The notes under the pieces are model-generated. The model did no database searches, had not been told where the DNA came from, and saw only the letters and a list, made by a program, of their open reading frames with translations. The position numbers were made by a program, and so were the translations under genes. 64,000 nucleotides of DNA, taken from positions 124,001 through 188,000 of IMG/VR virus record IMGVR_UViG_3300011934_000017; one strand, 5' to 3'. Below, piece after piece: positions 2,500 to 19,582 of the stretch; position 1 is the first letter of the stretch, and each line of letters opens with the position of its first letter.

Positions 2500-3990
2500 T
2501 TATTCGTCGTCGTCTTCATCCGATACTGCCGCAGATTTTTTGTTGGTATTGGAAGCACGTTTGAAGTCTACCAAATACTCATAGCCCTTTCCAGTTGCTA
2601 CCTGTTTTCGTAGAAAGTTTCGGAACAACACAGGCTTTTTCATATTCAGTGCATCGCACAGTGTACGAATGTCGGAGCGATCACCTTCAATCATGGTTTT
2701 GAACTGCGTCCATGTCAGTGTGACACCGTCTAAAGGACTCTTGAAGTCTATGTGGTAAGTCTTTTCTTTGCCTGTAGACTTATCACGTTTCGTAACATCA
2801 AAACCACTCAGGAATTTGATCTTCTTACGGGTGCCTCCAACTTGACCTGTCATCTTCAGATATTGATACGCATCCCATGTCGCACAAAAGCCAGTAGCAT
2901 CACCTTCAGCATTCTCAACAACAAGGCGCATCGTGATGGTCTGGTTAGGAACACCCCCAAGCTTGTTCTTGTGGCTGCGAATCTTGATATAGCGGTACGT
3001 ATCATTACCGTCTGCAATAACAGACTCTTCTTCTTCCAACATACCTTTACCGTGCGGAATGCTGACAGAAGACATACGTAGGCGAACGTCTGAGTAAAAC
3101 TTCAGTGCGTCACCGCAAGGCTCAGTCTCGGAAGGACCATACATTGCCATAGGTACTTTACGAAGCTGATTAACGCCGAGTACCACGATACGCTTGGAGC
3201 GCATCATGCCTTTCACACGCTTTAGGCCGTCGGAGAACATACGTGCTTGAAGCGCCAGCGACTTATCGCCTTCTTCTTTCTCGTCTGCAATACCAGGAAG
3301 CATGGCAGGATAAGAGTCAGTAAGAACGATAGCCTGAATACCTCCATCTTCAGCAGGAACACGAAAGCGATTGGTCTTGGTGAAGTATTTCTTGTCGTAT
3401 AAACCTTTAAGCGCTTTCTGATTCTCTTTGGTGTTATCGTAAATGAAATACCATTTGCCGTTCATTCGCACTTTGTCAGGCAAGACTTTACCCATCTTAG
3501 ACAGGTAGTTAAAGAATTTCTCGCCTGTGTCAGGAGCGTAGTAACGAACACGTGGTGCTACTACCCATTCTCCTGTCACGTCATCACGAACACCGAAAAC
3601 TTTCTCTACATCGCCGCTAACACCCATAGAGTGCATGATGTTTTCAATGTAGTCAGCTTGCGAACTACCTTCATAGTCAAAGTAGCTTGCAAAGCCTTTG
3701 AAAGCTTTCTGACCCATGATAGACGCAAGAATGGTCATGGCTGTTGTAGACTTACAGGACTGCTCGCCGCCGAAGCATGTATACCAACCACCACCTAACA
3801 TGCCTCCAGCTAACGCAACATCTAGCGATAGCAGGCCGGTACTGAATCGAGGTTCGTCTTTATCAATAGCCATAGAAGAGAGTCGAAACTTCTTTTCCAT
3901 GCTATCAATTTCAGCATCAATATGGGAGTAGGGATTAAACGCAGGAACCTCAGCTTCTTCAACACTTGTGCTTTTCTTACGCTTTGCCAT
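2500..3990 (-). CDS. recA: RecA/UvsX-like recombinase
   Basis: STG..SLDVAL.GG, Walker A GGEQSCKST, LTDS, ALQARMFS, GVNQLR, GDALKFYSDVRLR. Confidence 0.93.
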   Translation of the reverse strand: MAKRKKSTSVEEAEVPAFNPYSHIDAEIDSMEKKFRLSSMAIDKDEPRFSTGLLSLDVALAGGMLGGGWYTCFGGEQSCKSTTAMTILASIMGQKAFKGFASYFDYEGSSQADYIENIMHSMGVSGDVEKVFGVRDDVTGEWVVAPRVRYYAPDTGEKFFNYLSKMGKVLPDKVRMNGKWYFIYDNTKENQKALKGLYDKKYFTKTNRFRVPAEDGGIQAIVLTDSYPAMLPGIADEKEEGDKSLALQARMFSDGLKRVKGMMRSKRIVVLGVNQLRKVPMAMYGPSETEPCGDALKFYSDVRLRMSSVSIPHGKGMLEEEESVIADGNDTYRYIKIRSHKNKLGGVPNQTITMRLVVENAEGDATGFCATWDAYQYLKMTGQVGGTRKKIKFLSGFDVTKRDKSTGKEKTYHIDFKSPLDGVTLTWTQFKTMIEGDRSDIRTLCDALNMKKPVLFRNFLRKQVATGKGYEYLVDFKRASNTNKKSAAVSDEDDDE

Positions 3991-4003
3991 TCTATAACCT
4001 CAC

Positions 4004-4025
4004 AAAAACTGGCCGAAAGGGCCTT
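4004..4025 (-). terminator. GGCC hairpin plus T tract just upstream of the recA RBS
   Basis: GGCC-CTTTC-GGCC-AGTTTTT on minus strand; short stem. Confidence 0.5.
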
Positions 4026-4032
4026 ACGAAAA

Positions 4033-4100
4033 AGGATACATATCTAATAGTATCGTCTTTTAGATATGTATCCTACTCGCCGAAACTGAACGAGTAGGAT
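4033..4100. repeat. two overlapping perfect inverted repeats (15 bp and 10 bp)
   Basis: AGGATACATATCTAA 4033-4047 / TTAGATATGTATCCT 4060-4074; ATCCTACTCG 4070-4079 / CGAGTAGGAT 4091-4100. Confidence 0.9.
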
Positions 4101-4194
4101 ATTCGTGCCATCTCTATATGTCATCTATACGTTCGGTATTTCTGTCATTGCGCCCGTCTGCAAACTGTTACCACAAAAACAGCGGTTGCGGCGC

Positions 4195-4344
4195 TCACAT
4201 ACTGCCTACTTCTCGGGGCGGCATCAACCTTGAGCAATCTTGATCGTGTTTATAAACGACCTCAGCTACACTACACAGGTTCACGATAATCGGCAGTTGT
4301 GGTACTGCCACCCAAAGCAGTAGGAGAAACAATATGTATAGCAT
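4195..4344 (-). CDS. 49-aa small protein with hydrophobic N-terminus (below ORF-track cut-off)
   Basis: Strong SD TAGGAGA 5 nt before ATG; MLYILFLLLLWVAVPQLPIIVNLC... Confidence 0.5.
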   Translation of the reverse strand: MLYILFLLLLWVAVPQLPIIVNLCSVAEVVYKHDQDCSRLMPPREVGSM

Positions 4345-4377
4345 AAGGATCTCCTATTGTGCTTTGCTCTTTAGGGA

Positions 4378-5481
4378 TTATTCATCCCAGTCGTCTTCAT
4401 CATCATCAAAGGATACTTTCTTCTTCGATGATTTCTTTTTCTTTACAGGCTTTTTCTTCTTCTTCTTAGGTGCTGGCTCGTCTTCATCTTCATCGTCGTC
4501 CAGATCAACCTTCTTTTTCTTTACAGGCTTTTTCTTTTTCTTTACAGGCTTTTTCTTTTTCTTCTTAGGTGCTGGCTCGTCCTCGTCTTCATCTTCATCG
4601 TCGTCCAGATCAACCTTCTTTTTCTTCTTGGTTGACGCGGAAGAACCTAGATCAACATCGTCGTCCAAATCTTCATCCTCGTCATCACCGCCTTCAGACG
4701 TGGATTCGTCGCCAAGAATTTCCATGCGCTTGAAGTCTTCGGCAGCTTGCTTTTCAGACATACGACCTGCAATATCCAAAAGCTCTGGCGTTAGCTGCCA
4801 TACGAGGTACTCGCCTTCTTCATCGCTGAGTGGTGTGCGACCATCGACCTTGTCTGCACTGTACTTGTCAGAACCAGAAGCTTTCGGCTTGTACTTGATA
4901 TTCACGTCAACACCGTACTTCGGATGTGATATATCAAAAGCTTTCTTTTTACCTGTCTTCTTGTTCTTAACGATGTTGGTCTCACCGAGTTCTTGCATAC
5001 GGGAAACCATAGTATTGGTCAGACGGATAACGCGAACAGGAGTCCAAGACTTAGACTTGATATCTTTAAAGCCAGTCTTCTTTTCTTGCTTCGCCAATTC
5101 TGCTTTTCGAGCAGGTTCGTCTTCTTGTAGATCGCGGACGATAGCGTTCACAAGATAAAAGTGCTCGCTACGCATGGTTGCTTCTTGACCACCTTCGGTA
5201 GACAAGTCACAATACGGGCAATGCGCATCAAGCGGCTCTTCTTCGTTTTCTGGATTAAAGCTTACACAGAAACGCGGAATGTTAACCAGCTTCTTTTCTT
5301 TGCCTGCGTAAATCTTGATCCAGTGACGGCGAACAGGTAGAATGTCGGCCTCTAAGAAACGCAGTTGTACCCACTCGTCGGGATGATCGGTAAACTTATA
5401 GATATCTATAAGCTCTTCAAGACGCAACGAATCACGGTTGCCTGTCTTGGGTTTCATTTTACTAAAGCCTTTACCAGACAT
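4378..5481 (-). CDS. single-stranded DNA-binding protein, T4 gp32-like, with blocky acidic/basic tail
   Basis: RFL...RRHW, C...CPYCDL, YLVNAIV pattern as in gp32; lies next to recA; duplicated DDDEDEDEPAPKKKKKKPVKKKK tail. Confidence 0.7.
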   Translation of the reverse strand: MSGKGFSKMKPKTGNRDSLRLEELIDIYKFTDHPDEWVQLRFLEADILPVRRHWIKIYAGKEKKLVNIPRFCVSFNPENEEEPLDAHCPYCDLSTEGGQEATMRSEHFYLVNAIVRDLQEDEPARKAELAKQEKKTGFKDIKSKSWTPVRVIRLTNTMVSRMQELGETNIVKNKKTGKKKAFDISHPKYGVDVNIKYKPKASGSDKYSADKVDGRTPLSDEEGEYLVWQLTPELLDIAGRMSEKQAAEDFKRMEILGDESTSEGGDDEDEDLDDDVDLGSSASTKKKKKVDLDDDEDEDEDEPAPKKKKKKPVKKKKKPVKKKKVDLDDDEDEDEPAPKKKKKKPVKKKKSSKKKVSFDDDEDDWDE

Positions 5482-5524
5482 AGTAATCTCCTGTCAATGA
5501 AATGAAATGAATGTGTTCGAGCAC

Positions 5525-5532
5525 TATTTACA
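5525..5532 (-). promoter_or_regulatory. TGTAAATA motif (candidate phage-sigma promoter)
   Basis: Intergenic, about 45 nt upstream of ssb, correct orientation. Confidence 0.6.
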
Positions 5533-5534
5533 GT

Positions 5535-6551
5535 TTAAGAAATGCCTTCTTCTCGCATCTGGTTTTGCATCAAGGCCAATTCGTCGGCGGTAAAATATTC
5601 ACCTATGTCAAGGTAAAGCCTAGCACACCCAGAAATATCAGCATGTTTAGCTAAGTACATAACGATAGAGTCCGTTTCACCTCGTTCAAAATCGTGGTGT
5701 ATATCTTGGCCGTCACCTAAGACATTGTGCAAGCTTTTGGAGTCGTCTTCACCTGCAAGTTCATCTAGGCTGACGCTGTGATTCATAAAGCCGGTGTTTT
5801 TCTCTGCAATCTTTTTACGGTGGGATTGAGGAACGACATAGGCAATACCGTATTCGTGCTCTACCGTATTGCAGGTCTGAGCATTGAGAATCCACCAATT
5901 TAGATAGGAAGTCAAGGCACCCTTGTTACTATCATACTTATCAATCGCCAGCAAAATGCTTTTAAGAATAGACTGCCGAACATCATGAAAATCAAAATTA
6001 CTTCCGTTTGCATCTATGTGGATTTTGGCTTGCTTGGAAGAAAGCTTTAGATAGTGGTCTAACACTTTGGATCGACATTCATAAAATTTGGCTAAATAGG
6101 AAGCACTGATAGACATAATGCGATAAAAGCCTTGTCTGTCTGTGCGAAGCTGTGAAGCCTGTTTGTCCAATCTTTGCTTTAACTGGAGCCTGTGATTTCT
6201 ATCTGTCGTCATCATAGTGCTGTAGTCAGACAGGTAGTTAGGAAACATACGAAGAACTCTGCCTACGAAAACGTGCAGGAAGGAGCGTTCAAGCCTAGCT
6301 TCTCGTAGGAGTTCGAATTTCTCTGAACGATCCTCAGATACAAGAAACCTACATAGAATTTCTACAGTACGCTCTCTAGGCAAAGAACTGGGTTTTCTTT
6401 TCCTGTTAGCAGACACCAGCACTAAAATATAGGAGACCTGTTCATCAAAAACATCAGAGTTTAATATTATGGGCTCTAAAGCTTTATACAAGAACAGGTC
6501 CATCACTTGCTGGATCTGCTCACCTGTCAAATTTTTAGCAAGCAGAGTCAT
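5535..6551 (-). CDS. phage-encoded sigma70-family RNA polymerase sigma factor
   Basis: Region-2-like DVRQ...LLAIDKYDSNKGALTSYLNWWI; region-3-like SVSLDE. Confidence 0.78.
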   Translation of the reverse strand: MTLLAKNLTGEQIQQVMDLFLYKALEPIILNSDVFDEQVSYILVLVSANRKRKPSSLPRERTVEILCRFLVSEDRSEKFELLREARLERSFLHVFVGRVLRMFPNYLSDYSTMMTTDRNHRLQLKQRLDKQASQLRTDRQGFYRIMSISASYLAKFYECRSKVLDHYLKLSSKQAKIHIDANGSNFDFHDVRQSILKSILLAIDKYDSNKGALTSYLNWWILNAQTCNTVEHEYGIAYVVPQSHRKKIAEKNTGFMNHSVSLDELAGEDDSKSLHNVLGDGQDIHHDFERGETDSIVMYLAKHADISGCARLYLDIGEYFTADELALMQNQMREEGIS

Positions 6552-6559
6552 CGTGTTTC

Positions 6560-7261: not shown

Positions 7262-7262
7262 T

Positions 7263-7931: not shown

Positions 7932-8005
7932 ATAAAACCTCCAGGTTGTCTCTCAAATTACAGAAGCAAAACGCCCTTAAAGTCGAGACATACTAGCTAT
8001 TTACG

Positions 8006-8668
8006 CTATTTGGTTTCAGATTCTTTTTCCACCAAACTGAGAAATTGTAGAATAGAGTCTCTGGACCAGTTGTCAAATGTTTTTCCTACGACCGTTCCAT
8101 CGTACTTGGTTTTTGGATCTAACTTGAACCAGAGAACTTCAATAAGCTCGTCCGTTTCTAAAAGGTCTTCATCTTCTCCTAGAAATTTCGAAGAAGGTCT
8201 TGTGTCTGATCTAACAGTTTCTTCGTGGAAGAGATTGCGCCAGCTTTTAGGTTCTGACTCTTCGAACACCATTTGCTGGCCGGTGTGTTCTACAAGCTTA
8301 GCTTTCGGTCCAATGATGTTACTCATATTTTCCATGATACGGGAAAACACCAGTAAATCCATAGAACTGAAATCATCATCTTTGATGCTGAGTGTGAAAG
8401 TTGCTAGCTTTGCAGTTTCCATCTTGCTCTCCTTAGAATATGGGGATTCTGGTTCAGGAATAGGAGTCTCAACAACATCGAGAATTTTAGACATAAAAAG
8501 CTCGTCCTGTTCACCGTGCAACCAAAGGTGAGAGTCTTCCTCTAGTTCCTCATGAAACGGCTCATAGAACCACTCTAATAAAACCCACTTCTTGAAAGGC
8601 TTTCTATGATTCATAGAGGTCAGTACCCAGTACCAACCTGGCTTTCTATTTTTGTCGTTTGTGTTCAT
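8006..8668 (-). CDS. hypothetical protein (possible internal start at 8422)
   Basis: 220-aa ORF; in-frame ATG at 8422 has SD AAGGAG. Confidence 0.65.
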   Translation of the reverse strand: MNTNDKNRKPGWYWVLTSMNHRKPFKKWVLLEWFYEPFHEELEEDSHLWLHGEQDELFMSKILDVVETPIPEPESPYSKESKMETAKLATFTLSIKDDDFSSMDLLVFSRIMENMSNIIGPKAKLVEHTGQQMVFEESEPKSWRNLFHEETVRSDTRPSSKFLGEDEDLLETDELIEVLWFKLDPKTKYDGTVVGKTFDNWSRDSILQFLSLVEKESETK

Positions 8669-9137
8669 TGATAACCTCGAAGGAGCGCTTAGTTATTTCT
8701 TGATGATGTTCCATCAACTCTTTTCGAACTTCTGTCAAAATGCGACCAAGATGATTTTGACCAGTGCCTTCTACTTTACCCCAGAATCTATCGCCATGAT
8801 TGTTTCCTTCTTCTAACACAGCAGGGTACGTACCGATCAGTGAAATAGATAGATCAGGATTCTGTTTAAATTTCATGCGTACAATATTTTTCATCACGCG
8901 AAGCTTAACGTCTTCCCAGTCTTCACGCATAACAACCTTGTATCCAAAATGCTTTGCTTGCTTGGGCGAAGTAGCTTCAGCGATCTTTCGTTTCATCTGC
9001 CTATCACCAGTCTTGGCTGCCTGATAGGCGTGTTCAGAAGTCGGATAAGTAATGCCCCTACGTTCAATAGGGGCTGCATAGAAGTTGCTGAGGAAAAAAT
9101 ACTTTCCTCGAAAGCGATCAATTAGAGTGACGGTCAT
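8646..9137 (-). CDS. NADAR (YbiA-like) family protein
   Basis: FLSNFY, SEHAYQAAK, W...K..VM....KF.QN, E....DRFWG, G.N.LG..L..VR. Confidence 0.93.
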   Translation of the reverse strand: MTVTLIDRFRGKYFFLSNFYAAPIERRGITYPTSEHAYQAAKTGDRQMKRKIAEATSPKQAKHFGYKVVMREDWEDVKLRVMKNIVRMKFKQNPDLSISLIGTYPAVLEEGNNHGDRFWGKVEGTGQNHLGRILTEVRKELMEHHQEITKRSFEVINEHKRQK

Positions 9138-11450: not shown

Positions 11451-12155
11451 CTAGCTCCTGTCTATCGAAAACTCCAAAGAGGAAGAAACTAAGTCTTTGG
11501 CGAGGAGTGGTTTATCATGAATGATGCGGCTATCAAACAACGCCATGTATTCATCGTTATCACACACTATGGAAAGAACACGGTTTTTAGCCATCATAAA
11601 GAATGTTTCTGCACCGTTCGCTTCTATGATATCCTGAAGTCTTTTAACTCCTTTCAAAAGGGCTTCTGTGTCAGGATGGGTCTTTAGCAGAATCAAGTGA
11701 TCATACGGAATGGAGCCGGTAGCGGCAAGGTAGTTGTATGTCTTCCAGTGCAAGTCTAGCTTCCACTCCAGTCGTTGGCAAAGCTGGTGCGCATCATGAT
11801 CTTCATACGTAGCAAACCAACGTTGTGGTTCTACCTTTTTCTTCAAGTGACGTATGAACGCAAGCTCTCTGCGGGCTTCGTCAAGGCAAGGCTGTGCGGT
11901 CACCTTACGCGCTTTCTGCTCGTCAATGTTACACTGCGCCAGCATCTTTCCGCTCTTAGACTCTGTATCATCTGAGAGGATAACCTTCGAAGCCAATACT
12001 TTTGCCTGTGCTCGCAAACTTTCAGCCATAGAAGATTGAATGGCAAAGTCTCGATCCTCTTCCAATTCACACAGCACACGGTAGGCTTCATCGCACGTAT
12101 GGCAATTACTCAGAATAAGGTGAGCAATTTCAAACCTTGAATGTTTCCAATGCAT
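11451..12155 (-). CDS. hypothetical helical protein (start trimmed to MHWKHS)
   Basis: ATG at 12155 with SD GGAG. Confidence 0.7.
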   Translation of the reverse strand: MHWKHSRFEIAHLILSNCHTCDEAYRVLCELEEDRDFAIQSSMAESLRAQAKVLASKVILSDDTESKSGKMLAQCNIDEQKARKVTAQPCLDEARRELAFIRHLKKKVEPQRWFATYEDHDAHQLCQRLEWKLDLHWKTYNYLAATGSIPYDHLILLKTHPDTEALLKGVKRLQDIIEANGAETFFMMAKNRVLSIVCDNDEYMALFDSRIIHDKPLLAKDLVSSSLEFSIDRS

Positions 12156-12319
12156 AGTTCTCTCCAAAGCAAAATACCCGTGATGAAAGCAATTCAAAAG
12201 CTAAACTCGAAAGTTCGTTTTGATATTGACTCCCAAACACGGGTATTTATTAACAAGCACCAACATGGTCAGTGCTTGTTGTACCGGCAACGATTTTTAA
12301 TTAGTTTGAAGCGGCAAGC

Positions 12320-12796
12320 TTATAGCTCGTCGTCAAAATCATCGAAGTCGTCAGACTTTGCAGCTTTCTTGGCTTTCTTAGTCTTCTTGCCTTTGGCAGG
12401 AGCAGCTTCATCGGCAGCTTTCTTGGCTTTCTTAGTCTTCTTGCCTTTGGCGGGTGCTTCTTCTTCAGCAGCAGCTTTCTTACCTTTCTTGCCTTTCTTG
12501 CCTTTGGCGGGTGCTTCTTCTTCAGCAGCAGCTTTCTTGCCTTTACCTTTCTTGCCTTTGGCAGGCTTTTCTTCGGCAGCAGCTTTCTTGCCTTTACCTT
12601 TCTTGCCTTTGGCAGGAGCGGCGGCAGCTTCTTCGCCATTTTCTACGACTTCAAGTTGAGCCTGCACGTTTACGATTGCTTCATCGATTTTATTAGCCGC
12701 TTGGCCTAGACTCTTTTCTGAAGCTTGCAAGGCGCGAAGTTCTTTCTTGAGACGTGAAGCTTCGGCGCGCTGTTGAAGTTCTACTGTTTTAGCCAT
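12320..12796 (-). CDS. histone H1-like Lys/Ala-rich protein with tandem repeats
   Basis: Five AAxxxPAKGKKxKKxKK units after an N-terminal coiled coil; ends DDFDDFDDEL. Confidence 0.8.
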   Translation of the reverse strand: MAKTVELQQRAEASRLKKELRALQASEKSLGQAANKIDEAIVNVQAQLEVVENGEEAAAAPAKGKKGKGKKAAAEEKPAKGKKGKGKKAAAEEEAPAKGKKGKKGKKAAAEEEAPAKGKKTKKAKKAADEAAPAKGKKTKKAKKAAKSDDFDDFDDEL

Positions 12797-12880: not shown

Positions 12881-12887
12881 ATTTACA
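12880..12887 (-). promoter_or_regulatory. TGTAAATA motif
   Basis: Intergenic, upstream of the H1-like gene. Confidence 0.55.
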
Positions 12888-12921
12888 CTTTACCAGGTTT
12901 CTAAAATTAGACGATTAGGAA

Positions 12922-13314
12922 TTATTCGTCCCAGTCATCGTCATCGTCTTCATCTTCATCATCTTCATCATCTTCATCATCTTCATCATCTTCATCATCT
13001 TCATCTTCATCATCTTCATCGTCGTCGAGGTCTTCATCGTCGTCGAGGTCTTCGTCCTCGTCTTCGTCCTCGTCCTCTTCGTCAGCTTCATCTTCATCTT
13101 CATCTTCATCGTCATCGCCGAAGTCATCATCCTCTTCATCATCACCGGAATCATCTTCACCGTCTGGAACGGATTCGGCAACAGCGTCGGTAAGCGTGTC
13201 TAGCGTATAACCAGCAGCCTGGGCTTCGGACAATAGAGTAAGAATTGCGGAAGCAAGCAGTTCTTCCAAGTTCAGTTTTGGAGCTTTTGCTGCGGTTTTC
13301 TTTGACTTCGCCAT
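12922..13314 (-). CDS. highly acidic protein (poly-D/E C-terminal half)
   Basis: Basic N-terminus, short helix, long D/E tract built of 9-nt tandem repeats; ends DDDDWDE. Confidence 0.8.
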   Translation of the reverse strand: MAKSKKTAAKAPKLNLEELLASAILTLLSEAQAAGYTLDTLTDAVAESVPDGEDDSGDDEEDDDFGDDDEDEDEDEADEEDEDEDEDEDLDDDEDLDDDEDDEDEDDEDDEDDEDDEDDEDEDDDDDWDE

Positions 13315-13390
13315 TTTTAATTCCTCAATACTGATAAGATTTAGTCGAGCATATCGACAGATAGTTTTTACACTTTTACTTCAACTTACT

Positions 13391-14059
13391 TCAGAGGTCT
13401 TCGTCATCTAAGTCGTCGTCTTCTTCCTCGTCGTCGTCTTCATCTTCCTCGTCGTCGAGGTCTTCATCTTCCTCGTCGTCGAGGTCTTCATCTTCCTCGT
13501 CGTCCTCGTCCTCCTCTTCATCTTCGAGGTCTTCATCTTCTTCATCAAAATCTTCTTCTACAGGCTTTTTCTTCTTAGCCTTTCGTGAGGACTTTTCGTT
13601 ATCTTCTTCGTCCGCAAAGACTTCGATGTGGACGTTATCGTTTGAAAAGATTGTAGTAATCTCTCCAGTAACGGAATCTTTTACCGTCAAGGTACCTGTA
13701 GCAGCATCGCGGCGAACAAGACCTTTCACCGTGTACATAAGCTCAGACTTGATAAGGGTGATGCTTGACGGCTCACCTGGCTTACCGAAAACTTTGACAA
13801 CATCGCGGATTAAAAATGTTGAAATGCGAGTCTTTTTTGAGGCGTTAGTTTTCTTATGACGAAACACAACGCCTGTTTCATCGTAGGAGACTAGAAAACC
13901 ATTTAGCGTTACAGGTACGCGCATAGCATAGACGTTTACGGTATGTACCGCTTTCTTCGCGTCTAAGCCTACACCAGCTTTGATGCCGCGTAGACGTTTT
14001 GAAATCTTTTCAGACTGTGATAGGCGACCACGAGGTGCGCGTGTTGCTGACTTAGCCAT
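13391..14059 (-). CDS. beta-rich protein with acidic tail
   Basis: Basic N-terminus, globular middle, D/E tract ending DDLDDEDL. Confidence 0.8.
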   Translation of the reverse strand: MAKSATRAPRGRLSQSEKISKRLRGIKAGVGLDAKKAVHTVNVYAMRVPVTLNGFLVSYDETGVVFRHKKTNASKKTRISTFLIRDVVKVFGKPGEPSSITLIKSELMYTVKGLVRRDAATGTLTVKDSVTGEITTIFSNDNVHIEVFADEEDNEKSSRKAKKKKPVEEDFDEEDEDLEDEEEDEDDEEDEDLDDEEDEDLDDEEDEDDDEEEDDDLDDEDL

Positions 14060-14105: not shown

Positions 14106-14113
14106 TATTTACA
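14106..14113 (-). promoter_or_regulatory. TGTAAATA motif
   Basis: Between terminator hairpin 14124-14143 and start codon 14059. Confidence 0.6.
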
Positions 14114-14123
14114 CTTTATTGCA

Positions 14124-14143
14124 GAAGGGGCAGATGCCCCTTC
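14124..14143 (-). terminator. GC hairpin after the 14146-15366 gene
   Basis: GAAGGGGCA-GA-TGCCCCTTC. Confidence 0.6.
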
Positions 14144-14145
14144 GA

Positions 14146-15366
14146 TCATACCATCAAAAGAATGTCGGAATTTTCAGGCATCAGCAGTGCGGCTGCTTGC
14201 TGTGCAGTGTTGCCAGCAGGGAACAAACGGTAGATATCGTTATCCAGATCAACCGCACAGTGATGCAAGTAATTCGTGGAGATAATAACCGCTTCGCTTC
14301 CTTCTTCTACTGAGTAATGCTGTAGAAGTTCTACCACAGCAGAATCCAGCAGGTCTTCAGAACTAAAGGCGAAAGTCAGACGGAAGTCATCTTCTTCCAT
14401 GCTTGCGGCTTTAGCGTAGTTAGAAATGATACGCTGAATTGTAGCGAACGGTTTGATCAGCGAAGAGGAGCCTACAAGCAACGGCATCTTCACATTAACA
14501 GCGATGGTCGGACGAATTACGATAGTGCCGTCTTCATCGGTGTCAAACACTGCCCAGGTACCAAAGTGGTAAGATTCTTCGGCAGGAACTGTGTGCGTAG
14601 TAGGAGAAGCCGTAGCATTTACTTCTGTTACGCCAACAGAATCAAGGCCGTCTTCGTCGTCCTCTTCTGTGTCTTCAGTCTCTTCTTCCTGATGGAGTTC
14701 AATGAACTTGAATACAGGGTTCGAAGGATCAGGAAAGGCACCGTACATGATATTGTTGATATCCGCATTCATGTGATCCATCATGGCAGTAACACGATCT
14801 TCTGTGTTAGAGGCAGGACCAAAGAACACAACACTACGGTCAGACATACGGTCAACGTAACGCGCTAGCTCTGCAAGGTTGTCACGAATAAGACCGTACG
14901 GGTTATTCTTTTTACCAATGCCTTTGCGCATCGGGCTGTTCACGCTGTAGAACGCATCACCGATACGAACAACATCAGGAACATCGGCAGTTTCGCGTGA
15001 AACGTTGAGCATGATACGCGGAGCGATTCGCAGGCGCACAGAATCATTGCCTGCAAACAGTTGATTCAAAGTAGGTGCTGTTTCTTCTTCTGCTTCGCCT
15101 TGTTCTGGTTCTTCATCAACTACCATTTGAGTTGATTCGAGTTCAATCTCTGGAACCGATTCAACAGGCTCGCGATCACCTTCTGCGAAAGAACGTGCGG
15201 ACATGGATACGCCGTTATTATCGCGCTTAGCCATAAGCTCTGAAATTTCGGCATCAACATCGCTGTTTTGGGTACGGTTTTGATCAGTCATTTTCTTTAC
15301 CTCTTTTTCGTTTTGGGATACCATCTGCTGGTGAAGCTGGGAGCGTCTACTGCTCACTCTGTCCAT
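14146..15366 (-). CDS. acidic hypothetical protein (alternative start 15291)
   Basis: 406-aa ORF; both ATGs have SD-like sequences. Confidence 0.75.
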   Translation of the reverse strand: MDRVSSRRSQLHQQMVSQNEKEVKKMTDQNRTQNSDVDAEISELMAKRDNNGVSMSARSFAEGDREPVESVPEIELESTQMVVDEEPEQGEAEEETAPTLNQLFAGNDSVRLRIAPRIMLNVSRETADVPDVVRIGDAFYSVNSPMRKGIGKKNNPYGLIRDNLAELARYVDRMSDRSVVFFGPASNTEDRVTAMMDHMNADINNIMYGAFPDPSNPVFKFIELHQEEETEDTEEDDEDGLDSVGVTEVNATASPTTHTVPAEESYHFGTWAVFDTDEDGTIVIRPTIAVNVKMPLLVGSSSLIKPFATIQRIISNYAKAASMEEDDFRLTFAFSSEDLLDSAVVELLQHYSVEEGSEAVIISTNYLHHCAVDLDNDIYRLFPAGNTAQQAAALLMPENSDILLMV

Positions 15367-15376
15367 GTAATGTCTC

Positions 15377-16870
15377 TCACTCGGAAGTAATGATATACAC
15401 TGGAAGCTTCTGTTCTTTATTTACACTTCCCAGTTCTACAGGTCGTGCAATGATTCCAGTGACCTTTTGATCGGGCATACGTTCTGCAAACTTCTCAACG
15501 TATTTACAGTAGGCTTTTTCTGTAAGCGGACCTCCTTTCGTTCTAAGAACCGAGTAGTCGTCAAACAAATTGTCGTTGGTCACAGCAAAACCGTTCGATT
15601 GCAAATGTCGATTAACGTGCTGACCGACAGGTATAGGACGAACGTTACCGCGACTGCCGTAGTAAATGTCAGAAGCGACAAACCTGAAGTAGTTTTCAGG
15701 GCTACGAATGAACTGGTCAATGCGATACTTTGCATTGGCGTCCCGCAGCGAATCGAGGGACCTCTTGAGCTTTTCAATTTTGCTCTGAAGCAGAGGGACA
15801 GCTTTGCCTTGCTTGATTATCTCAGCATTCTTTTTGATAGAAGAGGCGGCAGCTTTAAGTTCGGCTGCCTCTTCGTAATTCTTTTTACGCTTTGCGCGGC
15901 TGTGTTTCTTGCGCGCCTCTTCAAACAGGTCTTTCAGACGTTCTAATTCGGAACCGTCTTTGATTCTTTTAATCTTCTCTTTCTTCTGGTCAATGTCATC
16001 CAATAGATCAACTACTTCAGGGCAGTCTACTATGGGTCTACGTTCTTCGTTCAGAGTACCTAGAAAATAATCGAACAAGGCAGAGACGGACTTAACTTCA
16101 GGTAGATGCGACTTGATGCTGTCTTTCATCGAGTCTGGAACAGTCAGTGTACCAGCCACAACAAAATAGTTTGCAGGACCAGAAAGCAATTCTGATACGT
16201 TACCGTGATAATCAGGATTGATCAGACGTTTGCCGTTAGAGCCAATGTAATTCGGTATGTCTAACTTGATAGCAACATCAAGACTAACGCGCTCACCGTC
16301 TAGGCCACCGATACGCACGTCATACAGGTAACTGTAGCTTCGCTTTTCGGTCTTGTGAATACGATAAACCACAAACATGCGCAGACCTGCGAGAAGTGGT
16401 GATATCAAATAACTGCCTTCAGGCACACCTCGAACAGGCTCTTTTTTGTACTGAGGTAACATCGAGGTATAGATATCATCCAACATCGCAGGATAAGCGT
16501 ATTCTTCAAGATTCGAAATGTGTTTTTTCAAATCACTCTGGCATTCTTCAAACTCAAGAGGACCAGAACCAAGTAGCGCGAAGTTTGCCCACGACATACC
16601 GTGAGCGTCGCTTTCTGGAACACCAAGACCTACAGAATACATCATGGACAGCGTGTACATGTCATCAGTATTACCTGACGTGGCACCTTTAGCAATCTTT
16701 TCGACTACCGTCTTCGCAAGATTAGGCATAATATTTGCGGTCTCTTCATCGGTTAAGTAAAGAGGGAAGTCCAAGATAGAGCCAGGATACGGAGTATGAA
16801 CAACGCAGCGCTCGACCATGAACAAACGGTAAAAAAGATCGCTCAAAGGCTCATGTAACTGATCCATCAT
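15377..16870 (-). CDS. SEL1-repeat plus degenerate NAD-ligase adenylation-like domain with coiled-coil/UVR insert
   Basis: MYTLSMMYSVGLGVPESDAHGMSW (SEL1-like); SPLLAGLRMFVVY, VVAGTL, FVASD, LQSNGF, VTGIIAR in ligase-motif order; NYEEAAELK (UVR-like). Confidence 0.45.
   Translation of the reverse strand: MMDQLHEPLSDLFYRLFMVERCVVHTPYPGSILDFPLYLTDEETANIMPNLAKTVVEKIAKGATSGNTDDMYTLSMMYSVGLGVPESDAHGMSWANFALLGSGPLEFEECQSDLKKHISNLEEYAYPAMLDDIYTSMLPQYKKEPVRGVPEGSYLISPLLAGLRMFVVYRIHKTEKRSYSYLYDVRIGGLDGERVSLDVAIKLDIPNYIGSNGKRLINPDYHGNVSELLSGPANYFVVAGTLTVPDSMKDSIKSHLPEVKSVSALFDYFLGTLNEERRPIVDCPEVVDLLDDIDQKKEKIKRIKDGSELERLKDLFEEARKKHSRAKRKKNYEEAAELKAAASSIKKNAEIIKQGKAVPLLQSKIEKLKRSLDSLRDANAKYRIDQFIRSPENYFRFVASDIYYGSRGNVRPIPVGQHVNRHLQSNGFAVTNDNLFDDYSVLRTKGGPLTEKAYCKYVEKFAERMPDQKVTGIIARPVELGSVNKEQKLPVYIITSE
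15418..15425 (-). promoter_or_regulatory. TGTAAATA motif
   Basis: At the end of the upstream gene, about 50 nt before the 15366 start. Confidence 0.45.
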
Positions 16871-17234: not shown

Positions 17235-17268
17235 ACTCCAAAAGAGGCCGAAGCCCCTTGAACGTGTT

Positions 17269-17640
17269 TTACATTTTTGATGCGTCTTTCAGCTTTTTCA
17301 GCGGTGTAATCTTCAGCTTGATAGATGCAGGCTTGGCTTTGAACGTTGTCTCTTCACCGGTGAACGGGCTGATACCTTTACGCGCTTTCTTTGCAGGCAC
17401 TTTCTTGCTGGTAATCTTGAACAGACCGGACAGCATGAACTCACCGATACCACGCTTGCGCACATGACCAAGCATTGTTTCTTCTAGTGCATCCATGACC
17501 TTCTTAACATCTTTCTTGTCCAGCTCAGTCTTCTCTGCCAGATGCTCCAGAAGCTGAGTCTTAGTCATCTTTTCTTTGATGGCCTTGGGAGCAGTTGCTT
17601 TGGTAGCTGCTTTGGCAGTTGCTTTTGGCTTAGTAGTCAT
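17269..17640 (-). CDS. HU/IHF-family DNA-binding protein with Ala/Lys N-terminal tail
   Basis: MTKTQLLEHLAEKTELDKKDV...GLFKI...ARKGISPFTGE...FKAKPA. Confidence 0.92.
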   Translation of the reverse strand: MTTKPKATAKAATKATAPKAIKEKMTKTQLLEHLAEKTELDKKDVKKVMDALEETMLGHVRKRGIGEFMLSGLFKITSKKVPAKKARKGISPFTGEETTFKAKPASIKLKITPLKKLKDASKM

Positions 17641-17671
17641 TTTGAATTCCTTAATAAAATATAAAAGTTGC

Positions 17672-17947
17672 TTAGTGTTGCAGGTCGTTCAGGAGTTTCA
17701 CAATCTTTTCTAGGATGTCACTGCCGTAGCTCTCTACAATATGCGTCTTAGGTGGGTCGCACCGATTAGCGTGAAGCATATCCTCCAGACGCGACACCTC
17801 AGGCTTCAAACTTTTTTGCACCCGTGCCTTGACGCGATGCATGTCATCAGCATGGTGCACTTCGTTTATTTGGAGTTGGTCTTTCAAACTTTTTACCTCA
17901 CGCTCCAATTCCTCGATACGCGCTTGGGCTTCAGCTAATCTACTCAT
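17672..17947 (-). CDS. small coiled-coil protein (start trimmed to MSRLAE)
   Basis: The longer track ORF includes hairpin 17975-17994. Confidence 0.65.
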   Translation of the reverse strand: MSRLAEAQARIEELEREVKSLKDQLQINEVHHADDMHRVKARVQKSLKPEVSRLEDMLHANRCDPPKTHIVESYGSDILEKIVKLLNDLQH

Positions 17948-17974
17948 GACAGTTTCTTGAAAAGTTTGCAGATG

Positions 17975-17994
17975 GGCGGGGCATCTGCCCCGCC
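17975..17994 (-). terminator. GC hairpin after the 18005-19582 gene
   Basis: GGCGGGGCA-TC-TGCCCCGCC. Confidence 0.55.
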
Positions 17995-18004
17995 GTGTCA
18001 CTAC

Positions 18005-19582
18005 TTACAGGGCGTCGTCAAAATCATCGAAGTCGTCTTCGTCTTCGTCTTCGTCTTCGTCTTCGTCTTCGTCTTCAAACTCTTCCTCGTCTTCTTCTAG
18101 GTCATCTTCGTCCTCGTCTTCAAATTCTTCTTCATCGTCTTCATCTTCAAACTCTTCCTCGTCGTCTGCTTCGTCCTCGTCTTCGTCCTCCTCTAGGTCA
18201 TCTTCAAATTCTTCTTCATCGTCGAGGTCCAGATCATCTTCTACCTCTTCTACCGTGTCTTCGATAATCTCCATGCGTACAACTTTTGCTAGATCAACCA
18301 GCTTGACCTCTTCAGTGTCGAGCACGAACAGAACAACTTTTGACTTGGCGTCGGAGAAGCCGATAACGAGGGCTTCACTGCCACGGTACTCAAGCTTGGT
18401 ACCAATGTCAACTTCATCGCCAAGCTTCGGCTCGATCACATCGTCAAAGTTTGCATCCCAGCCTTCGATGGCGCGCGCAATCTTTTTGGTGTCTAACGCA
18501 TCACCTACGATAGCTGCAATCTTTTCTAGGCGAGTATCGTCTTCAGTAGACGATTCTTCGGCTTCAGTCATTGCGGCCGCGTATGCCTCAATATCTTCTT
18601 CAGAGGCGTTGGTGGGCAACAGACCGATTTGAAGGGTCAGGCGTTCTTCGTTGTACATGCCGCCGGTAGTCGCTACGGTCAGGTCAAGACCTGTCAGGTC
18701 TTTCAAGATGTTGCCAATGTTGTCACGCACCGCGTCTTCAATCTTTTTAGTCATCGCATCGTTGAAAGTTGACACAGGCTTCAGCTTCTTGGTGTCACCG
18801 CTTGCGCCACGCTTGCGGCGCTTGATGCCAGAGCTTTCTTTATCTTCGGCAGCGGGCTGCTTGGGCTGCTTGGGTGCTTTCTTTTTGCTGTTCAAAAGTT
18901 CACGCAGCTCGGCGACTTTGACACCACGTGCTTCAGTGCGATCTTCGATCTTACCAGCATCGACCAGTGCTGTGATAAGCTCCTTGCGTGTCATCTTTTT
19001 CTCAGAAGACGCTGCAGGCTGCTTCGGCTGCTTAGGTGCTTTCTTTTTCGCGTGAAGTTCACGCAGTTCCTCGATGGACACGCCTTTGGCTACGCGACGG
19101 TTGCTAATCTTGCCAGCATCTACCAGCGCTGTAATCAGTTCTGTACGTGTCATCTTTTTCTCAGAAGAGGCAGCAGGCTGCTTCGGCTGACGTGGCTGCT
19201 TGGGCTTCTTCTTAGACAACTTTTCTACCATGCTGCGAAGTTCTGTGATGAGAATGCCTTTGGAGTCGGAGCGCTTTTCAAACTTCTTGGCTTCAACGAG
19301 GGCGGTGATGCAATCGCGGCGAGTCATCTTGCTTGCGTCATTTTTCATATCTTTATCTCCGGTTGTCTTGGGTGTAGTTGTCTTGGGTGCATCTTTTGCA
19401 GGGCTGTCGCCAAGCTGCACAAGACCACGTCCTTTCTTTTTCACGTCAGCGGCTTGCACAACGATGCCGCCTTTGGTCTTGTAAGATACGCGACCGACCT
19501 TTGCGATGCGATCTTTTGAATCGTCTGCCAGGGTGATGCTCATGCCTTCGAATGACTGGTCTGCTTTTTGACGTGTAGCCAT
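18005..19582 (-). CDS. repeat protein: three helix-loop-helix (HeH/Rho-N-like) units with PKQP linkers and an acidic tail
   Basis: KMTRxxxITALVxAxKxxxRxxxxGxxxxELR x3; ends DDFDDFDDAL; ATG at 19582 with SD GAGAG. Confidence 0.8.
   Translation of the reverse strand: MATRQKADQSFEGMSITLADDSKDRIAKVGRVSYKTKGGIVVQAADVKKKGRGLVQLGDSPAKDAPKTTTPKTTGDKDMKNDASKMTRRDCITALVEAKKFEKRSDSKGILITELRSMVEKLSKKKPKQPRQPKQPAASSEKKMTRTELITALVDAGKISNRRVAKGVSIEELRELHAKKKAPKQPKQPAASSEKKMTRKELITALVDAGKIEDRTEARGVKVAELRELLNSKKKAPKQPKQPAAEDKESSGIKRRKRGASGDTKKLKPVSTFNDAMTKKIEDAVRDNIGNILKDLTGLDLTVATTGGMYNEERLTLQIGLLPTNASEEDIEAYAAAMTEAEESSTEDDTRLEKIAAIVGDALDTKKIARAIEGWDANFDDVIEPKLGDEVDIGTKLEYRGSEALVIGFSDAKSKVVLFVLDTEEVKLVDLAKVVRMEIIEDTVEEVEDDLDLDDEEEFEDDLEEDEDEDEADDEEEFEDEDDEEEFEDEDEDDLEEDEEEFEDEDEDEDEDEDEDDFDDFDDAL

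What the first reader, a model, noticed from the sequence alone, without database searches (positions are those of the whole stretch)
2500..19582. Shared acidic-aromatic C-terminal tips and blocky charge patterns across replication and nucleoid proteins
Seen: SSB ends FDDDEDDWDE and the 12922-13314 protein ends DDDDDWDE. The H1-like protein ends DDFDDFDDEL and the 18005-19582 protein ends DDFDDFDDAL. The 13391-14059 protein ends DDLDDEDL and RecA ends SDEDDDE. These form two matched pairs on unrelated proteins. Several proteins combine poly-Lys and poly-Asp/Glu blocks. Established: the E. coli SSB tip (DFDDDIPF) is a hub-binding motif, and blocky polyampholyte regions promote phase separation. 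Inference: this may be a phage-encoded interaction code that builds a shell-less replication condensate, or decoys that titrate host SSB-tip-binding enzymes.
Basis: partly seen in the sequence, partly recalled or inferred. Interest (0 to 1): 0.7.

Follow-up and report, generated by a model that had tools for sequence, protein, structure and literature searches.

The report
Shared acidic-aromatic tips on phage DNA proteins
In a 220 kb jumbo phage, several unrelated DNA-coating proteins end in long charged floppy tails capped by two short conserved acidic-aromatic end-motifs; these look like shared docking tags, related in principle to the known tips of single-strand-binding proteins, but their binding partners are still unknown.

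Summary
All six C-termini are as described. The two matched pairs beat shuffles of each protein's own tail (p about 0.001).

They recur in independent relatives. The gp32-type SSB and a small polyacidic protein keep a W-acidic tip. The lysine-rich "H1-like" protein and a 525-aa repeat protein keep FxxFxxxL.

The tips are unique sequence capping slippage-prone tandem-repeat tails, which change length freely between genomes. Most of these genes carry their own copy of the group's middle/late promoter motif.

Best reading: two classes of selected C-terminal docking motifs on disordered tails of a co-regulated replication/nucleoid module of PaBG/Lu11-type ("Lupandier") jumbo phages. This is the same principle as E. 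coli SSB-Ct, T4 gp32 and the T7 gp2.5/gp4 tails.

- **Receptors:** not identified; one complex prediction gave no answer.
- **Condensate idea:** physically plausible (very blocky charge; no shell, tubulin or phage RNA polymerase genes found) but untested.
- **Host-decoy idea:** unlikely here, because the tips lack the bacterial ...IPF signature that other branches of this SSB family do carry.
- **F pair:** also shows DNA-level concerted evolution.

It is a new variant of a known kind.

The parts
2500..3990 (-). UvsX/RecA-like recombinase (496 aa), short acidic end SDEDDDE with no aromatic residue
   Evidence: PF00154 at 4e-23 and phrog_97 at 1e-52. An acidic end is conserved in 13 of 14 orthologs, and the gene always sits just downstream of SSB.
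4717..5481 (-). SSB core (residues 1-255): gp32-type OB fold with conserved Cys/His
   Evidence: phrog_15004 at 1.5e-116. Model pLDDT 88.7. Foldseek matches the RB69/T4 gp32 core, 2a1k_A at E 7.5e-6 and 1gpc, probability 1.0. C88, P89 and Y90 are invariant; C72, C91 and H53 nearly invariant.
4381..4716 (-). SSB disordered tail (112 aa) of alternating poly-Lys and poly-Asp/Glu blocks, each acidic block opening V-D/S-L/F-DDD
   Evidence: Charge blockiness z = 13.8 against shuffles. A 105-nt unit repeats 1.9 times at 92% identity over 4432-4626.
4381..4410 (-). SSB tip FDDDEDDWDE (W class)
   Evidence: Lies outside the tandem array. W falls in the last 1-6 residues in 11 of 12 compared genomes. 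43 of 120 family members end W + acidic.
5526..5535 (-). Promoter-like motif AACTGTAAAT, 45 nt upstream of SSB
   Evidence: Same core as Lu11's annotated 'putative middle/late promoter' CTGTAAAT.
5535..6551 (-). Phage sigma factor, conserved neighbour of SSB
   Evidence: PF04542 at 6e-5. Annotated RNA polymerase sigma factor in PaBG, Lu11, HRDY3, Y3 and AD1.
12320..12796 (-). 'H1-like' protein (158 aa): about 55-aa helical N-terminus, Lys/Ala-rich repeats, acidic-aromatic tip
   Evidence: phrog_36478 at 1.4e-13. A 54-nt unit repeats 4.7 times over 12360-12613. No histone domain in Pfam.
12323..12352 (-). H1-like tip DDFDDFDDEL (F class)
   Evidence: In 12 of 12 genomes the only aromatic residues of the 25-140-aa tail lie in the last 2-11 residues, spaced i and i+3 in 11 of them. 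The tip lies outside the tandem array.
12881..12890 (-). Promoter-like motif AAGTGTAAAT, 85 nt upstream of H1-like
12922..13314 (-). acid130: about 45-aa helical N-domain, about 80 residues of Asp/Glu, tip DDDDDWDE
   Evidence: No family hit. 88% acidic tail. 6/9-nt repeats over 12934-13117, stopping right at the W codon. An aromatic residue sits in the last 2-6 positions in 9 of 11 orthologs, W in 7, including NCTB.
13366..13375 (-). Promoter-like motif AAGTGTAAAA, 52 nt upstream of acid130
   Evidence: The same motif follows the p222 stop codon in L016, L021, L023 and L024.
13391..14059 (-). p222: about 150-aa beta-rich domain, Lys block, polyacidic tail, tip DDLDDEDL
   Evidence: phrog_22271 at 5e-16. 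The tip class [LF]-acidic(3-4)-L is kept in window, L016 and L021; L022 and L023 keep only the terminal L. It is lost in L024, and the tails of Lu11 and HRDY3 end in Lys.
14107..14116 (-). Promoter-like motif AAGTGTAAAT, 48 nt upstream of p222
14146..15366 (-). p406, conserved unknown protein of the cluster, with its own promoter motif at 15419-15428
   Evidence: Synteny with relatives. Motif. No informative fold lead.
15377..16870 (-). p497, conserved cluster member with a ligase-like nucleotidyltransferase fold
   Evidence: phrog_35683. Model pLDDT 71.7. Foldseek matches NAD+-dependent DNA ligase adenylation domains, probability 1.0, E 1.7e-4, TM 0.26-0.40.
17269..17640 (-). HU-type DNA-binding protein with a Lys/Ala-rich N-terminal extension
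   Evidence: PF00216 at 7e-16. In relative L016 the HU domain is fused to the same helical repeats found in p525.
18005..19582 (-). p525: N-terminal basic region, about 53-aa helical repeats (18849-19201), globular C-domain, polyacidic tail, tip DDFDDFDDAL (18008-18037)
   Evidence: A 159-nt unit repeats 2.2 times. Tail plus F tip are present in window, L016 (DDDFADFDEDL) and L021 (DDDFDDFDDEL). The F tip is absent in PaBG, Lu11, HRDY3 and NCTB. The 24 nt encoding DDFDDFDD are identical to those of the H1-like gene.
24307..24582 (-). PC4-like (ssDNA-binding fold) protein with acidic end GEEDE
   Evidence: PF02229 at 5e-9. Listed in the proteome scan.
47760..48914 (+). Clamp-loader subunit with acidic end FDNVEEEEE
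   Evidence: PF13177 at 3e-34 and phrog_5846 at 3e-95.

Best explanation
The tips are selected short linear docking motifs. They cap repeat-generated, intrinsically disordered, highly charged tails on a co-regulated set of DNA-coating proteins of a PaBG/Lu11-type ('Lupandier') jumbo phage.

There are two classes:
- W class: acidic run, then W, then 1-4 acidic residues. It sits on the gp32-type SSB and on a small polyacidic protein.
- F class: F-x-x-F-acidic-(L) at the C-terminus. It sits on the Lys-rich H1-like protein and the 525-aa repeat protein, with p222's [L/F]-acidic-L end as a looser relative.

Inferred mechanism, by analogy with E. coli SSB-Ct, the T4 gp32 C-terminal domain and the T7 gp2.5/gp4 tails: the aromatic side chain(s), flanking carboxylates and the free C-terminus insert into a basic/hydrophobic pocket on a partner, or on a DNA-binding cleft. 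The long tail acts as a flexible, charge-patterned tether. Two proteins with the same tip would then address, and compete for, the same site.

Shown: the motifs exist, they are non-random, they are conserved while the tails drift, and the genes share a promoter motif.
Inferred: that the tips bind, and that each class has one receptor.
Unknown: what the receptors are.
For: 1. Non-random in the window: p about 0.0006-0.001 against shuffles of the proteins' own tails.
2. Conservation across independent genomes while tail lengths change (SSB tails 103-232 aa, H1-like 61-140 aa, acidic protein 50-105 aa):
   - H1-like keeps its only tail aromatics in the last 2-11 residues in 12 of 12 genomes.
   - SSB keeps W in the last 1-6 residues in 11 of 12.
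   - The acidic protein keeps an aromatic in the last 2-6 in 9 of 11.
3. The tips are unique sequence lying just outside the tandem-repeat arrays that build the tails.
4. The W pair is kept with different synonymous codons in the window and L021. L021's F pair keeps identical ...EL with different codons and different stop codons. Both point to protein-level constraint.
5. acid130 has no recognisable DNA-binding domain on which its tip could act in cis, so its SSB-like tip argues for a trans target.
6. The SSB core has the gp32 fold. Acidic C-terminal regions of gp32 and T7 gp2.5 are documented protein-docking elements, and in T7 two unrelated proteins share one polymerase patch (PMC11551737, PMC12339929).
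7. Within this one SSB family the tip switches between discrete classes: W-acidic 43, [IVL]PF 10, F-acidic 11, basic 28 of 120. That is what an exchangeable address label would look like.
8. A shared middle/late-type promoter motif sits 45-85 nt upstream of SSB, H1-like, acid130, p222 and p406.
Against: - No receptor was found. The only complex prediction (SSB core with acid130) returned 'no answer'.
- The pairing is clade-limited. In PaBG and L024 the acidic protein ends in F rather than W, and in Lu11 and HRDY3 it has no aromatic. p525 orthologs in PaBG, Lu11, HRDY3 and NCTB lack the F tip. p222 tails are basic in Lu11 and HRDY3.
- The F pair shows DNA-level identity in the window: 24 of 24 nt, with a chance of about 0.0045 for the eight synonymous choices. 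A similar identity occurs in L021. Part of the match is therefore copying, not independent convergence.
- Aromatic residues in acidic tails could be needed only for generic cis autoinhibition.
- Relatives are homologous, so conservation counts are not independent events.
Confidence: 0.6

Rival explanations
1. Cis-only autoinhibition. Each acidic-aromatic tip folds back on its own protein's basic DNA-binding surface (the SSB cleft, the H1-like Lys repeats, p525's basic N-terminal half) to tune DNA affinity. The tips look alike because the physics is the same, not because they share a partner.
For: Tail-to-core autoinhibition is established for T4 gp32, T7 gp2.5 and E. coli SSB (PMC12339929 notes that the gp2.5 tail sits in its own DNA groove in models; PMC12893549). 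SSB, H1-like and p525 all combine a basic DNA-binding part with an acidic end.
Against: acid130 has no recognisable DNA-binding part yet carries the SSB-type W tip in window, L016, L019, L021, L022, L023 and NCTB. Two discrete motif classes with fixed spacing (F-x-x-F; W followed by 1-4 acidic residues) are more specific than generic charge neutralisation needs.
Confidence: 0.25
2. Condensate scaffold. Polycations (H1-like, the HU N-tail, p525's N-half, the SSB Lys blocks), polyanions (acid130, the p222 and p525 tails, the SSB Asp blocks) and DNA coacervate into a shell-less replication/nucleoid compartment, with the tips acting as specific stickers.
For: - Extreme charge blockiness of the SSB tail (z = 13.8) and of H1-like (z = 6.7).
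- Internal pseudo-tip repeats give multivalency: V-D-L-DDD blocks in the window, KWDEDDD and KFDDDED repeats in L023 and L024.
- No chimallin, tubulin or multisubunit RNA polymerase hits in a genome estimated complete.
- The genes are co-regulated.
- E. coli SSB phase-separates through its linker and tip (PMC7584906), and a first phage LLPS case was reported in 2026 (PMC13401047).
Against: No experimental or structural evidence exists for this phage group. Blocky polyampholytes may simply collapse intramolecularly. Sequence composition alone cannot show phase separation.
Confidence: 0.2
3. Neutral by-product. Replication slippage and gene conversion among GAY-rich low-complexity tracts generate and homogenise tails and tips, and the matches have no function.
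For: - All tails are tandem arrays.
- The 24 nt under DDFDDFDD are identical in H1-like and p525, including a TTT codon that no other H1-like ortholog uses at that position.
- L021 shows the same within-genome identity.
- The p525 F tip and tail are clade-specific.
- A 6-nt indel variant of the p222 tail appears in public contigs.
Against: - The tips lie outside the arrays.
- The aromatic positions survive divergence down to 47% SSB identity (NCTB) while everything upstream changes.
- The W pair differs at synonymous sites.
- L016's F pair differs in sequence (DDFDDFDDFDEEL against DDDFADFDEDL) yet keeps the F-x-x-F-x-x-x-L register.
Confidence: 0.12
4. Host-hub hijack or decoy. The tips mimic the host SSB C-terminus, to recruit or titrate host SSB-interacting enzymes.
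For: Other branches of this same phage SSB family end in DDIPF, DVPF or DIPF, which is the bacterial SSB-Ct signature (10 of 120; also L003 and L007). Both tip classes here begin with an F/L-DDD element reminiscent of DFDDDIPF.
Against: Neither class ends in [IVL]-P-F, and the terminal Pro-Phe is the critical determinant of SSB-Ct recognition (established knowledge; PMC10164576, PMC10018359). The phage encodes its own Pol I, DnaB, clamp, clamp loader and UvsX. The host is unknown (stromatolite metagenome).
Confidence: 0.08

Closest known systems
E. coli SSB C-terminal tip (SSB-Ct, ...DFDDDIPF) as interaction hub
   Same: An acidic run plus aromatic or hydrophobic residues at the very C-terminus of an SSB, behind a disordered linker. 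It is conserved while the linker drifts. The linker and tip of EcSSB also drive condensation (PMC7584906, PMC10164576).
   Different: - The core here is gp32-type, not the bacterial homotetrameric OB fold.
- The tip is W-acidic and lacks Pro-Phe.
- The linker consists of alternating Lys and Asp blocks rather than Gly/Gln/Pro.
- The same tip also sits on a second protein that is not an SSB.
T7 gp2.5 (SSB) and gp4 (helicase-primase) acidic, Phe-terminated tails sharing one basic patch on gp5 polymerase
   Same: Unrelated replication proteins of one phage carry look-alike acidic-aromatic C-terminal tails that address one site (PMC12339929 and references there). This is the closest precedent for 'matched tips'. 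DnaB here also ends acidic-aromatic (DDDYALS).
   Different: The matched partners here are not helicase and SSB. They are SSB with a polyacidic protein, and a Lys-rich nucleoid-type protein with a repeat protein. There are two separate classes, and the receptor is unknown.
T4 gp32 C-terminal (A) domain
   Same: Same core fold and same domain logic of basic N-terminus, core and acidic C-terminal protein-docking region. A gp32 C-terminal helix docks on Dda through V258, L262, F265 and D263 (PMC11551737).
   Different: gp32's mapped Dda contact lies at residues 248-270, not at the extreme tip. gp32 has no poly-Lys/poly-Asp block linker and no W tip.
RPA70N-binding acidic/aromatic motifs and the DNA mimic DSS1 (eukaryotes)
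   Same: Short acidic motifs with spaced aromatic or Leu residues on many unrelated proteins dock in one basic OB-fold cleft. DSS1 is a small, very acidic, aromatic-bearing protein described as a DNA mimic acting on RPA (PMC7641332, PMC11329725). This is a functional analogy for acid130 beside SSB and UvsX.
   Different: There is no homology. That RPA70N ligands resemble DDFDDFDDEL is my recollection, not a test. Binding of acid130 to the SSB core was not supported or refuted.
Sliding-clamp-binding C-terminal tips shared by T4/RB69 gp43, gp33 and gp55 (recalled from memory)
   Same: Unrelated proteins share an acidic/hydrophobic C-terminal tip that docks on one hub. The phage encodes a divergent beta-clamp (G000:204570-205760).
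   Different: Clamp motifs are more hydrophobic and less acidic. Clamp binding was not tested here.

Membership tests
T4 gp32-type SSB | OB-fold core with the gp32 topology | tested here: met
   Model pLDDT 88.7. Foldseek: 2a1k_A at E 7.5e-6, 1gpc at 1.1e-4, probability 1.0, TM 0.48-0.58. A sequence profile against the PDB found nothing, so the relationship is visible only by fold.
T4 gp32-type SSB | Zinc-binding Cys/His cluster in the core | tested here: inconclusive
   C88 is invariant; C72, C91 and H53 are nearly invariant in 24 homologs, with a CPYC motif. Metal binding and equivalence to gp32 His64/Cys77/Cys87/Cys90 were not checked structurally.
T4 gp32-type SSB | Acidic C-terminal protein-interaction domain | tested here: met
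   112-aa tail with 37% Asp/Glu and an acidic tip. Actual partner binding was not tested.
Bacterial SSB-Ct hub motif | C-terminal D-D-D-[IVL]-P-F | tested here: not met
   The window SSB ends DDWDE. No protein of the genome ends in [IVL]PF after an acidic run. 10 of 120 relatives of the SSB do.
RecA/UvsX recombinase | RecA ATPase core | tested here: met
   PF00154 at 4.2e-23 and phrog_97 at 1.2e-52.
Linker histone H1 | Winged-helix globular (H15) domain flanked by Lys-rich tails | tested here: not met
   No Pfam domain, only phrog_36478 of unknown function. The N-terminus looks like a helical or coiled-coil segment. The resemblance is compositional (Lys/Ala repeats) only.
HU/IHF | Bac_DNA_binding domain | tested here: met
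   PF00216 at 6.8e-16 for 17269-17640.
Nucleus-forming jumbo phages (Chimalliviridae) | Chimallin shell protein, PhuZ tubulin, multisubunit phage RNA polymerases | tested here: not met
   phiKZ gp54 gives no match at E <= 1. PF00091 tubulin: none. PF00623 RNA polymerase: none. The genome has direct terminal repeats and is estimated 100% complete. These were single-sequence or Pfam searches only, so very remote homologs cannot be excluded.
[quoted passage not shown] | Shared gene content and synteny: sigma-SSB-UvsX block, Pol I plus beta-clamp, DnaB | tested here: met
   Identities to PaBG: SSB 59%, UvsX 56%, sigma 52%, Pol I 58%, clamp 38%, with the same gene order. The group is defined in PMC7412058.
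Sel1/TPR peptide receptors (considered for p497) | Several Sel1/TPR repeats recognised by profile | tested here: not met
   Only an Atlas feature lead at 0.84. No Sel1 or TPR hit in Pfam at E <= 1 in 5 orthologs. The fold search points to ligase adenylation domains instead.

The most novel reading that the evidence does not exclude
A shell-less phage 'chromatin' or replication compartment. Co-expressed polycations (H1-like, HU, the repeat protein p525), polyanions (acid130, p222) and a block-charged gp32-type SSB would coacervate with phage DNA. Two orthogonal C-terminal address labels (W class and FxxF...L class) would decide which clients or enzymes are recruited. acid130 would act as a DSS1- or prothymosin-like mimic or chaperone that competes with the SSB tip.
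Probability: 0.15. Interest if true: 0.85.

Novelty: new variant of a known kind. Interest (0 to 1): 0.58.

Why it matters
Acidic-aromatic C-terminal tips are how SSBs organise replication, recombination and repair enzymes in bacteria, T4 and T7. Here the same device appears in two conserved flavours. It is also shared with proteins that are not SSBs: a polyacidic protein, a Lys-rich DNA-coating protein and a repeat protein. All of them lie in a poorly studied, widespread jumbo-phage group that builds no protein nucleus.

If each tip class has a receptor, this gives a compact, testable wiring diagram for how such phages organise their replicating DNA. It also gives a natural system for studying how short motifs evolve at the ends of repeat-driven disordered tails, including tip-class switching to the host-like IPF ending.

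Two cultivable relatives (PaBG on PAO1, Lu11 on P. putida) carry the conserved H1-like and SSB tips, so the idea can be tested directly.

Tried and rejected
- **Complex prediction of SSB core (alignment A1) with full-length acid130:** 'no answer', score 0.00, controls not run. This is not evidence either way.
- **p497 as a TPR/Sel1 'carboxylate-clamp' receptor for the tips:** the Atlas lead scored 0.84. Pfam did not confirm it in 5 orthologs, and the fold search points to ligase adenylation domains. Dropped.
- **Phyletic test (do the acidic/basic cluster and the W-tip SSB co-occur?):** not discriminating. NCTB and the Yersinia phage, whose SSBs end in poly-Lys, still have the cluster elsewhere in the genome.
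- **Searches that found nothing:** the viral-contig scan with p406; the word search with acid130 residues 1-50; the exhaustive profile search with the 50-residue acid130 N-domain; the SSB profile against PDB sequences.
- **No informative domain match:** p525 repeats against PDB and Pfam; p222 N-domain in the Atlas; p406 in the Atlas.
- **Pfam beta-clamp and UDG models on the genome:** nothing. The clamp was found only through PaBG's annotated homolog.
- **Public reads:** only assembler contigs are available, and they break inside the tails, so there is no population-level test of tip against tail variability.
- **PaBG literature:** it does not discuss these genes. PaBG's 14 abundant virion proteins do not include the orthologs (PMC7412058), which argues weakly against a virion role.
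- **Similarity just after the stop codons of SSB and acid130 (TCCCTAA / TTCCTAA):** not followed up further. Downstream promoter elements explain similar cases in relatives.

Full report
**What the window is.** The window is bases 124,001-188,000 of a 220,237-bp virus record with direct terminal repeats, estimated complete. Public runs that hold it are stromatolite metagenomes. By protein similarity and synteny it belongs with the 'Lupandier' jumbo phages (Lu11, PaBG, NCTB, and the Erwinia and Dickeya phages). Identities to PaBG are SSB 59%, UvsX 56%, sigma 52%, Pol I 58% and beta-clamp 38%, with the same sigma-SSB-UvsX order (group defined in PMC7412058). No chimallin, tubulin or multisubunit RNA polymerase homolog was found. 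So it is not a nucleus-forming phage by those hallmarks.

**Checking the observation.** The genome-wide scan of 215 called genes finds only 10 with at least 6 acidic residues among the last 10. They are the five tailed proteins (SSB, acid130, p222, H1-like, p525), UvsX, DnaB (ends DDDYALS), a clamp-loader subunit, a PC4-like ssDNA-binding-fold protein, and one unknown. The five tailed proteins share six non-acidic residues in register within their last ten positions. Shuffling each protein's own last 15-30 residues matches that in 11-19 of 20,000 trials. They have no detectable homology to each other. Charge blockiness is extreme in the SSB tail (z = 13.8), clear in H1-like (z = 6.7) and weak in p222. 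The acid130 and p525 tails are plain polyacid.

**What the proteins are.**
- **SSB.** It has no Pfam hit, but it belongs to phrog_15004. A confident model (pLDDT 88.7) matches the RB69/T4 gp32 core, with a conserved Cys/His cluster. It is a gp32-type SSB with a 112-residue tail of alternating Lys and Asp/Glu blocks.
- **'RecA'.** This is a UvsX-like recombinase. Its short acidic end is an ordinary family trait, conserved in orthologs.
- **'H1-like' protein.** It has a helical N-terminus and 18-residue Lys/Ala repeats, with no histone domain.
- **acid130.** A roughly 45-residue helical domain followed by about 80 Asp/Glu.
- **p222.** A small beta-rich domain, then a Lys block, then polyacid.
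- **p525.** It has 53-residue helical repeats that by eye resemble helix-extended-helix DNA-binding motifs. This is unconfirmed. In one relative the same repeats are fused to HU.
- **Between them.** An HU gene, and two conserved unknowns. One of these (p497) has a ligase-like nucleotidyltransferase fold.

**Are the tips conserved?** Yes, and this is the key result.
- Among 120 SSB homologs, the close clade (72-90% identity) always ends in a hydrophobic residue, 5-7 Asp, W, then 1-4 acidic residues.
- Family-wide, the ends fall into discrete classes: W-acidic 43, basic 28, F-acidic 11, [IVL]PF 10, acidic only 7.
- I fetched seven metagenomic relatives at 66-90% SSB identity (L016, L017, L019, L021, L022, L023, L024) and compared them with PaBG, Lu11, HRDY3 and NCTB.
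- The H1-like protein keeps its only tail aromatics within the last 2-11 residues in 12 of 12 genomes, usually as DDFDDF(DDF)D-x-L.
- SSB keeps W in the last 1-6 residues in 11 of 12.
- The acidic protein keeps an aromatic in the last 2-6 residues in 9 of 11, and W in 7. That includes NCTB, whose SSB itself ends in poly-Lys.
- p525 orthologs in L016 and L021 end DDDFADFDEDL and DDDFDDFDDEL.
- p222 keeps [L/F]-acidic-L in window, L016 and L021, and a terminal L in L022 and L023.
- Meanwhile tail lengths roam: SSB 103-232 residues, H1-like 61-140, the acidic protein 50-105.
- Tandem Repeats Finder shows every tail is a slippage-prone array. The tips are unique sequence sitting just outside those arrays.

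**Limits of the pairing.**
- At about 66% SSB identity (L024) and in PaBG, the acidic protein ends in F rather than W. In Lu11 and HRDY3 it has no aromatic.
- p525 orthologs outside the close clade lack the F tip. NCTB keeps an acidic tail, but PaBG, Lu11 and HRDY3 do not.
- p222 tails are basic in Lu11 and HRDY3.

So the deeply conserved elements are the SSB aromatic-acidic tip and the H1-like FxxF tip. The exact 'matched pairs' are a feature of the window's clade.

**DNA level.** In the window, the 24 nt encoding DDFDDFDD are identical in H1-like and p525, including a TTT codon not used at that position by other H1-like orthologs. The chance of eight equal synonymous choices is about 0.0045. 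L021 shows the same within-genome identity. This is concerted evolution, most simply gene conversion between GAY-rich tracts. However, L021's two tips then diverge in the last two codons and the stop codon while keeping ...EL. L016's pair differs in sequence but keeps the F-x-x-F-x-x-x-L register. The W pair differs at synonymous sites in every genome. Copying therefore contributed to the F pair, but protein-level constraint is needed to explain the whole pattern.

**Co-regulation.** The motif AA[GC]TGTAAA[AT] has the same core as Lu11's annotated 'putative middle/late promoter'. It lies 45-85 nt upstream of SSB, H1-like, acid130, p222 and p406, one copy per gene. The exact 9-mer AAGTGTAAA occurs 5 times in the window against 0.9 expected. 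The same motif follows the p222 stop codon in relatives.

**Mechanism.** The best-supported reading is that these are C-terminal short linear docking motifs on disordered tethers. That is the principle established for three systems:
- E. coli SSB-Ct (PMC10164576, PMC10018359).
- The gp32 C-terminal region, for which a Dda complex has been solved (PMC11551737).
- T7, where the acidic Phe-ended tails of gp2.5 and gp4 use one basic patch on the polymerase (PMC12339929).

acid130 has no evident DNA-binding part, so its SSB-type tip argues for a trans target and for competition with SSB. The switch of this SSB family's tip to the host-like DDIPF in other branches shows that the tip behaves as an exchangeable address. 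It also suggests that the W tip addresses phage proteins, not host proteins. I could not identify receptors:
- The TPR/Sel1 lead for p497 failed.
- A phyletic test was uninformative.
- The single complex prediction gave no answer.

A condensate is physically reasonable. The system has block polyampholyte SSB, polycations, polyanions and multivalent internal pseudo-tips, and no shell genes. It would be timely, because LLPS in phage development was first shown only in 2026 (PMC13401047). Nothing here tests it, though. Host-enzyme decoys are unlikely for these tip classes, because the Pro-Phe signature is absent.

**Verdict.** This is a new variant of a known kind, of moderate-to-good interest, and it can be tested in PaBG or Lu11.

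Noticed in passing
window 4334-5158 (+) and 12141-12659 (+): Long antisense ORFs (274 and 172 aa, full of poly-Ser/Phe/Leu) run opposite the SSB and H1-like low-complexity tails. They are artefacts of repeat composition, and a naive longest-ORF gene caller picked one over the real H1-like gene.
   Followed up: yes
window 15377-16870 (-): p497, conserved across the phage group, has a predicted fold resembling the adenylation (nucleotidyltransferase) domain of NAD+-dependent DNA ligases and RNA ligases, with an inserted long helical segment. No obvious K-x-D-G motif was seen, so it could be an unrecognised or inactive ligase-like enzyme.
   Followed up: partly
L016:17594-17941 and L022:11346-11684 (relatives); absent from window 3991-4377: Some relatives carry an Acb2/Tad1-hairpin (anti-CBASS/Thoeris sponge-like) gene inserted between SSB and UvsX. 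The window has only a 387-bp gap there, with no ORF of 50 aa or more.
   Followed up: no
L024:11299-14217, L015:21298-24801, L023:6472-8193 and L023:20301-end: Inteins (Intein_splicing, LAGLIDADG) interrupt UvsX and other replication genes in several relatives. The window's UvsX is intein-free.
   Followed up: no
window 634-1305 (-), 8646-9137 (-), 24307-24582 (-): Three unusual cargo genes. The ortholog of the first gene carries PF02308 (MgtC) in L017 and L018. The orthologous position of the second carries PF08719 (NADAR) in L018 and L019. The third hits PF02229 (PC4-like ssDNA-binding fold) directly.
   Followed up: partly
window about 36000: GC skew and AT skew flip sign at about 36 kb (negative before, positive after), coinciding with a switch of coding strand. 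This is a divergence point of transcription and possibly replication.
   Followed up: no
window 13419-13525: Public assembler contigs from two stromatolite runs include a variant of the p222 acidic tail with a 6-nt deletion (at 13467) and two substitutions, at roughly a third of local depth. The contigs also break inside all the low-complexity tails. This may be real tail-length polymorphism or repeat mis-assembly.
   Followed up: partly
G000:117735-119105 (outside the window), L002:26924-28390, L023:18022-19422: The DnaB-type helicase also ends in an acidic run plus a conserved aromatic motif (DDDYALS, GDYALA, HAYALE). This is a possible third tip class, reminiscent of the T7 gp4 tail.
   Followed up: partly
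L023:10001-11488 and L024:10001-11224: In these relatives each acidic block of the SSB tail opens with an aromatic residue (repeated KWDEDDD or KFDDDED). The tail therefore carries several internal copies of a tip-like motif.
   Followed up: partly
window 4368-4380 and 12912-12924: The bases just after the stop codons of SSB and acid130 are similar (TAA TCCCTAA against TAA TTCCTAA). In L021 the two downstream regions are also alike (TCCCGTCTGAC against TCCCATCCGAC). This may be a shared regulatory element or a trace of copying.
   Followed up: no
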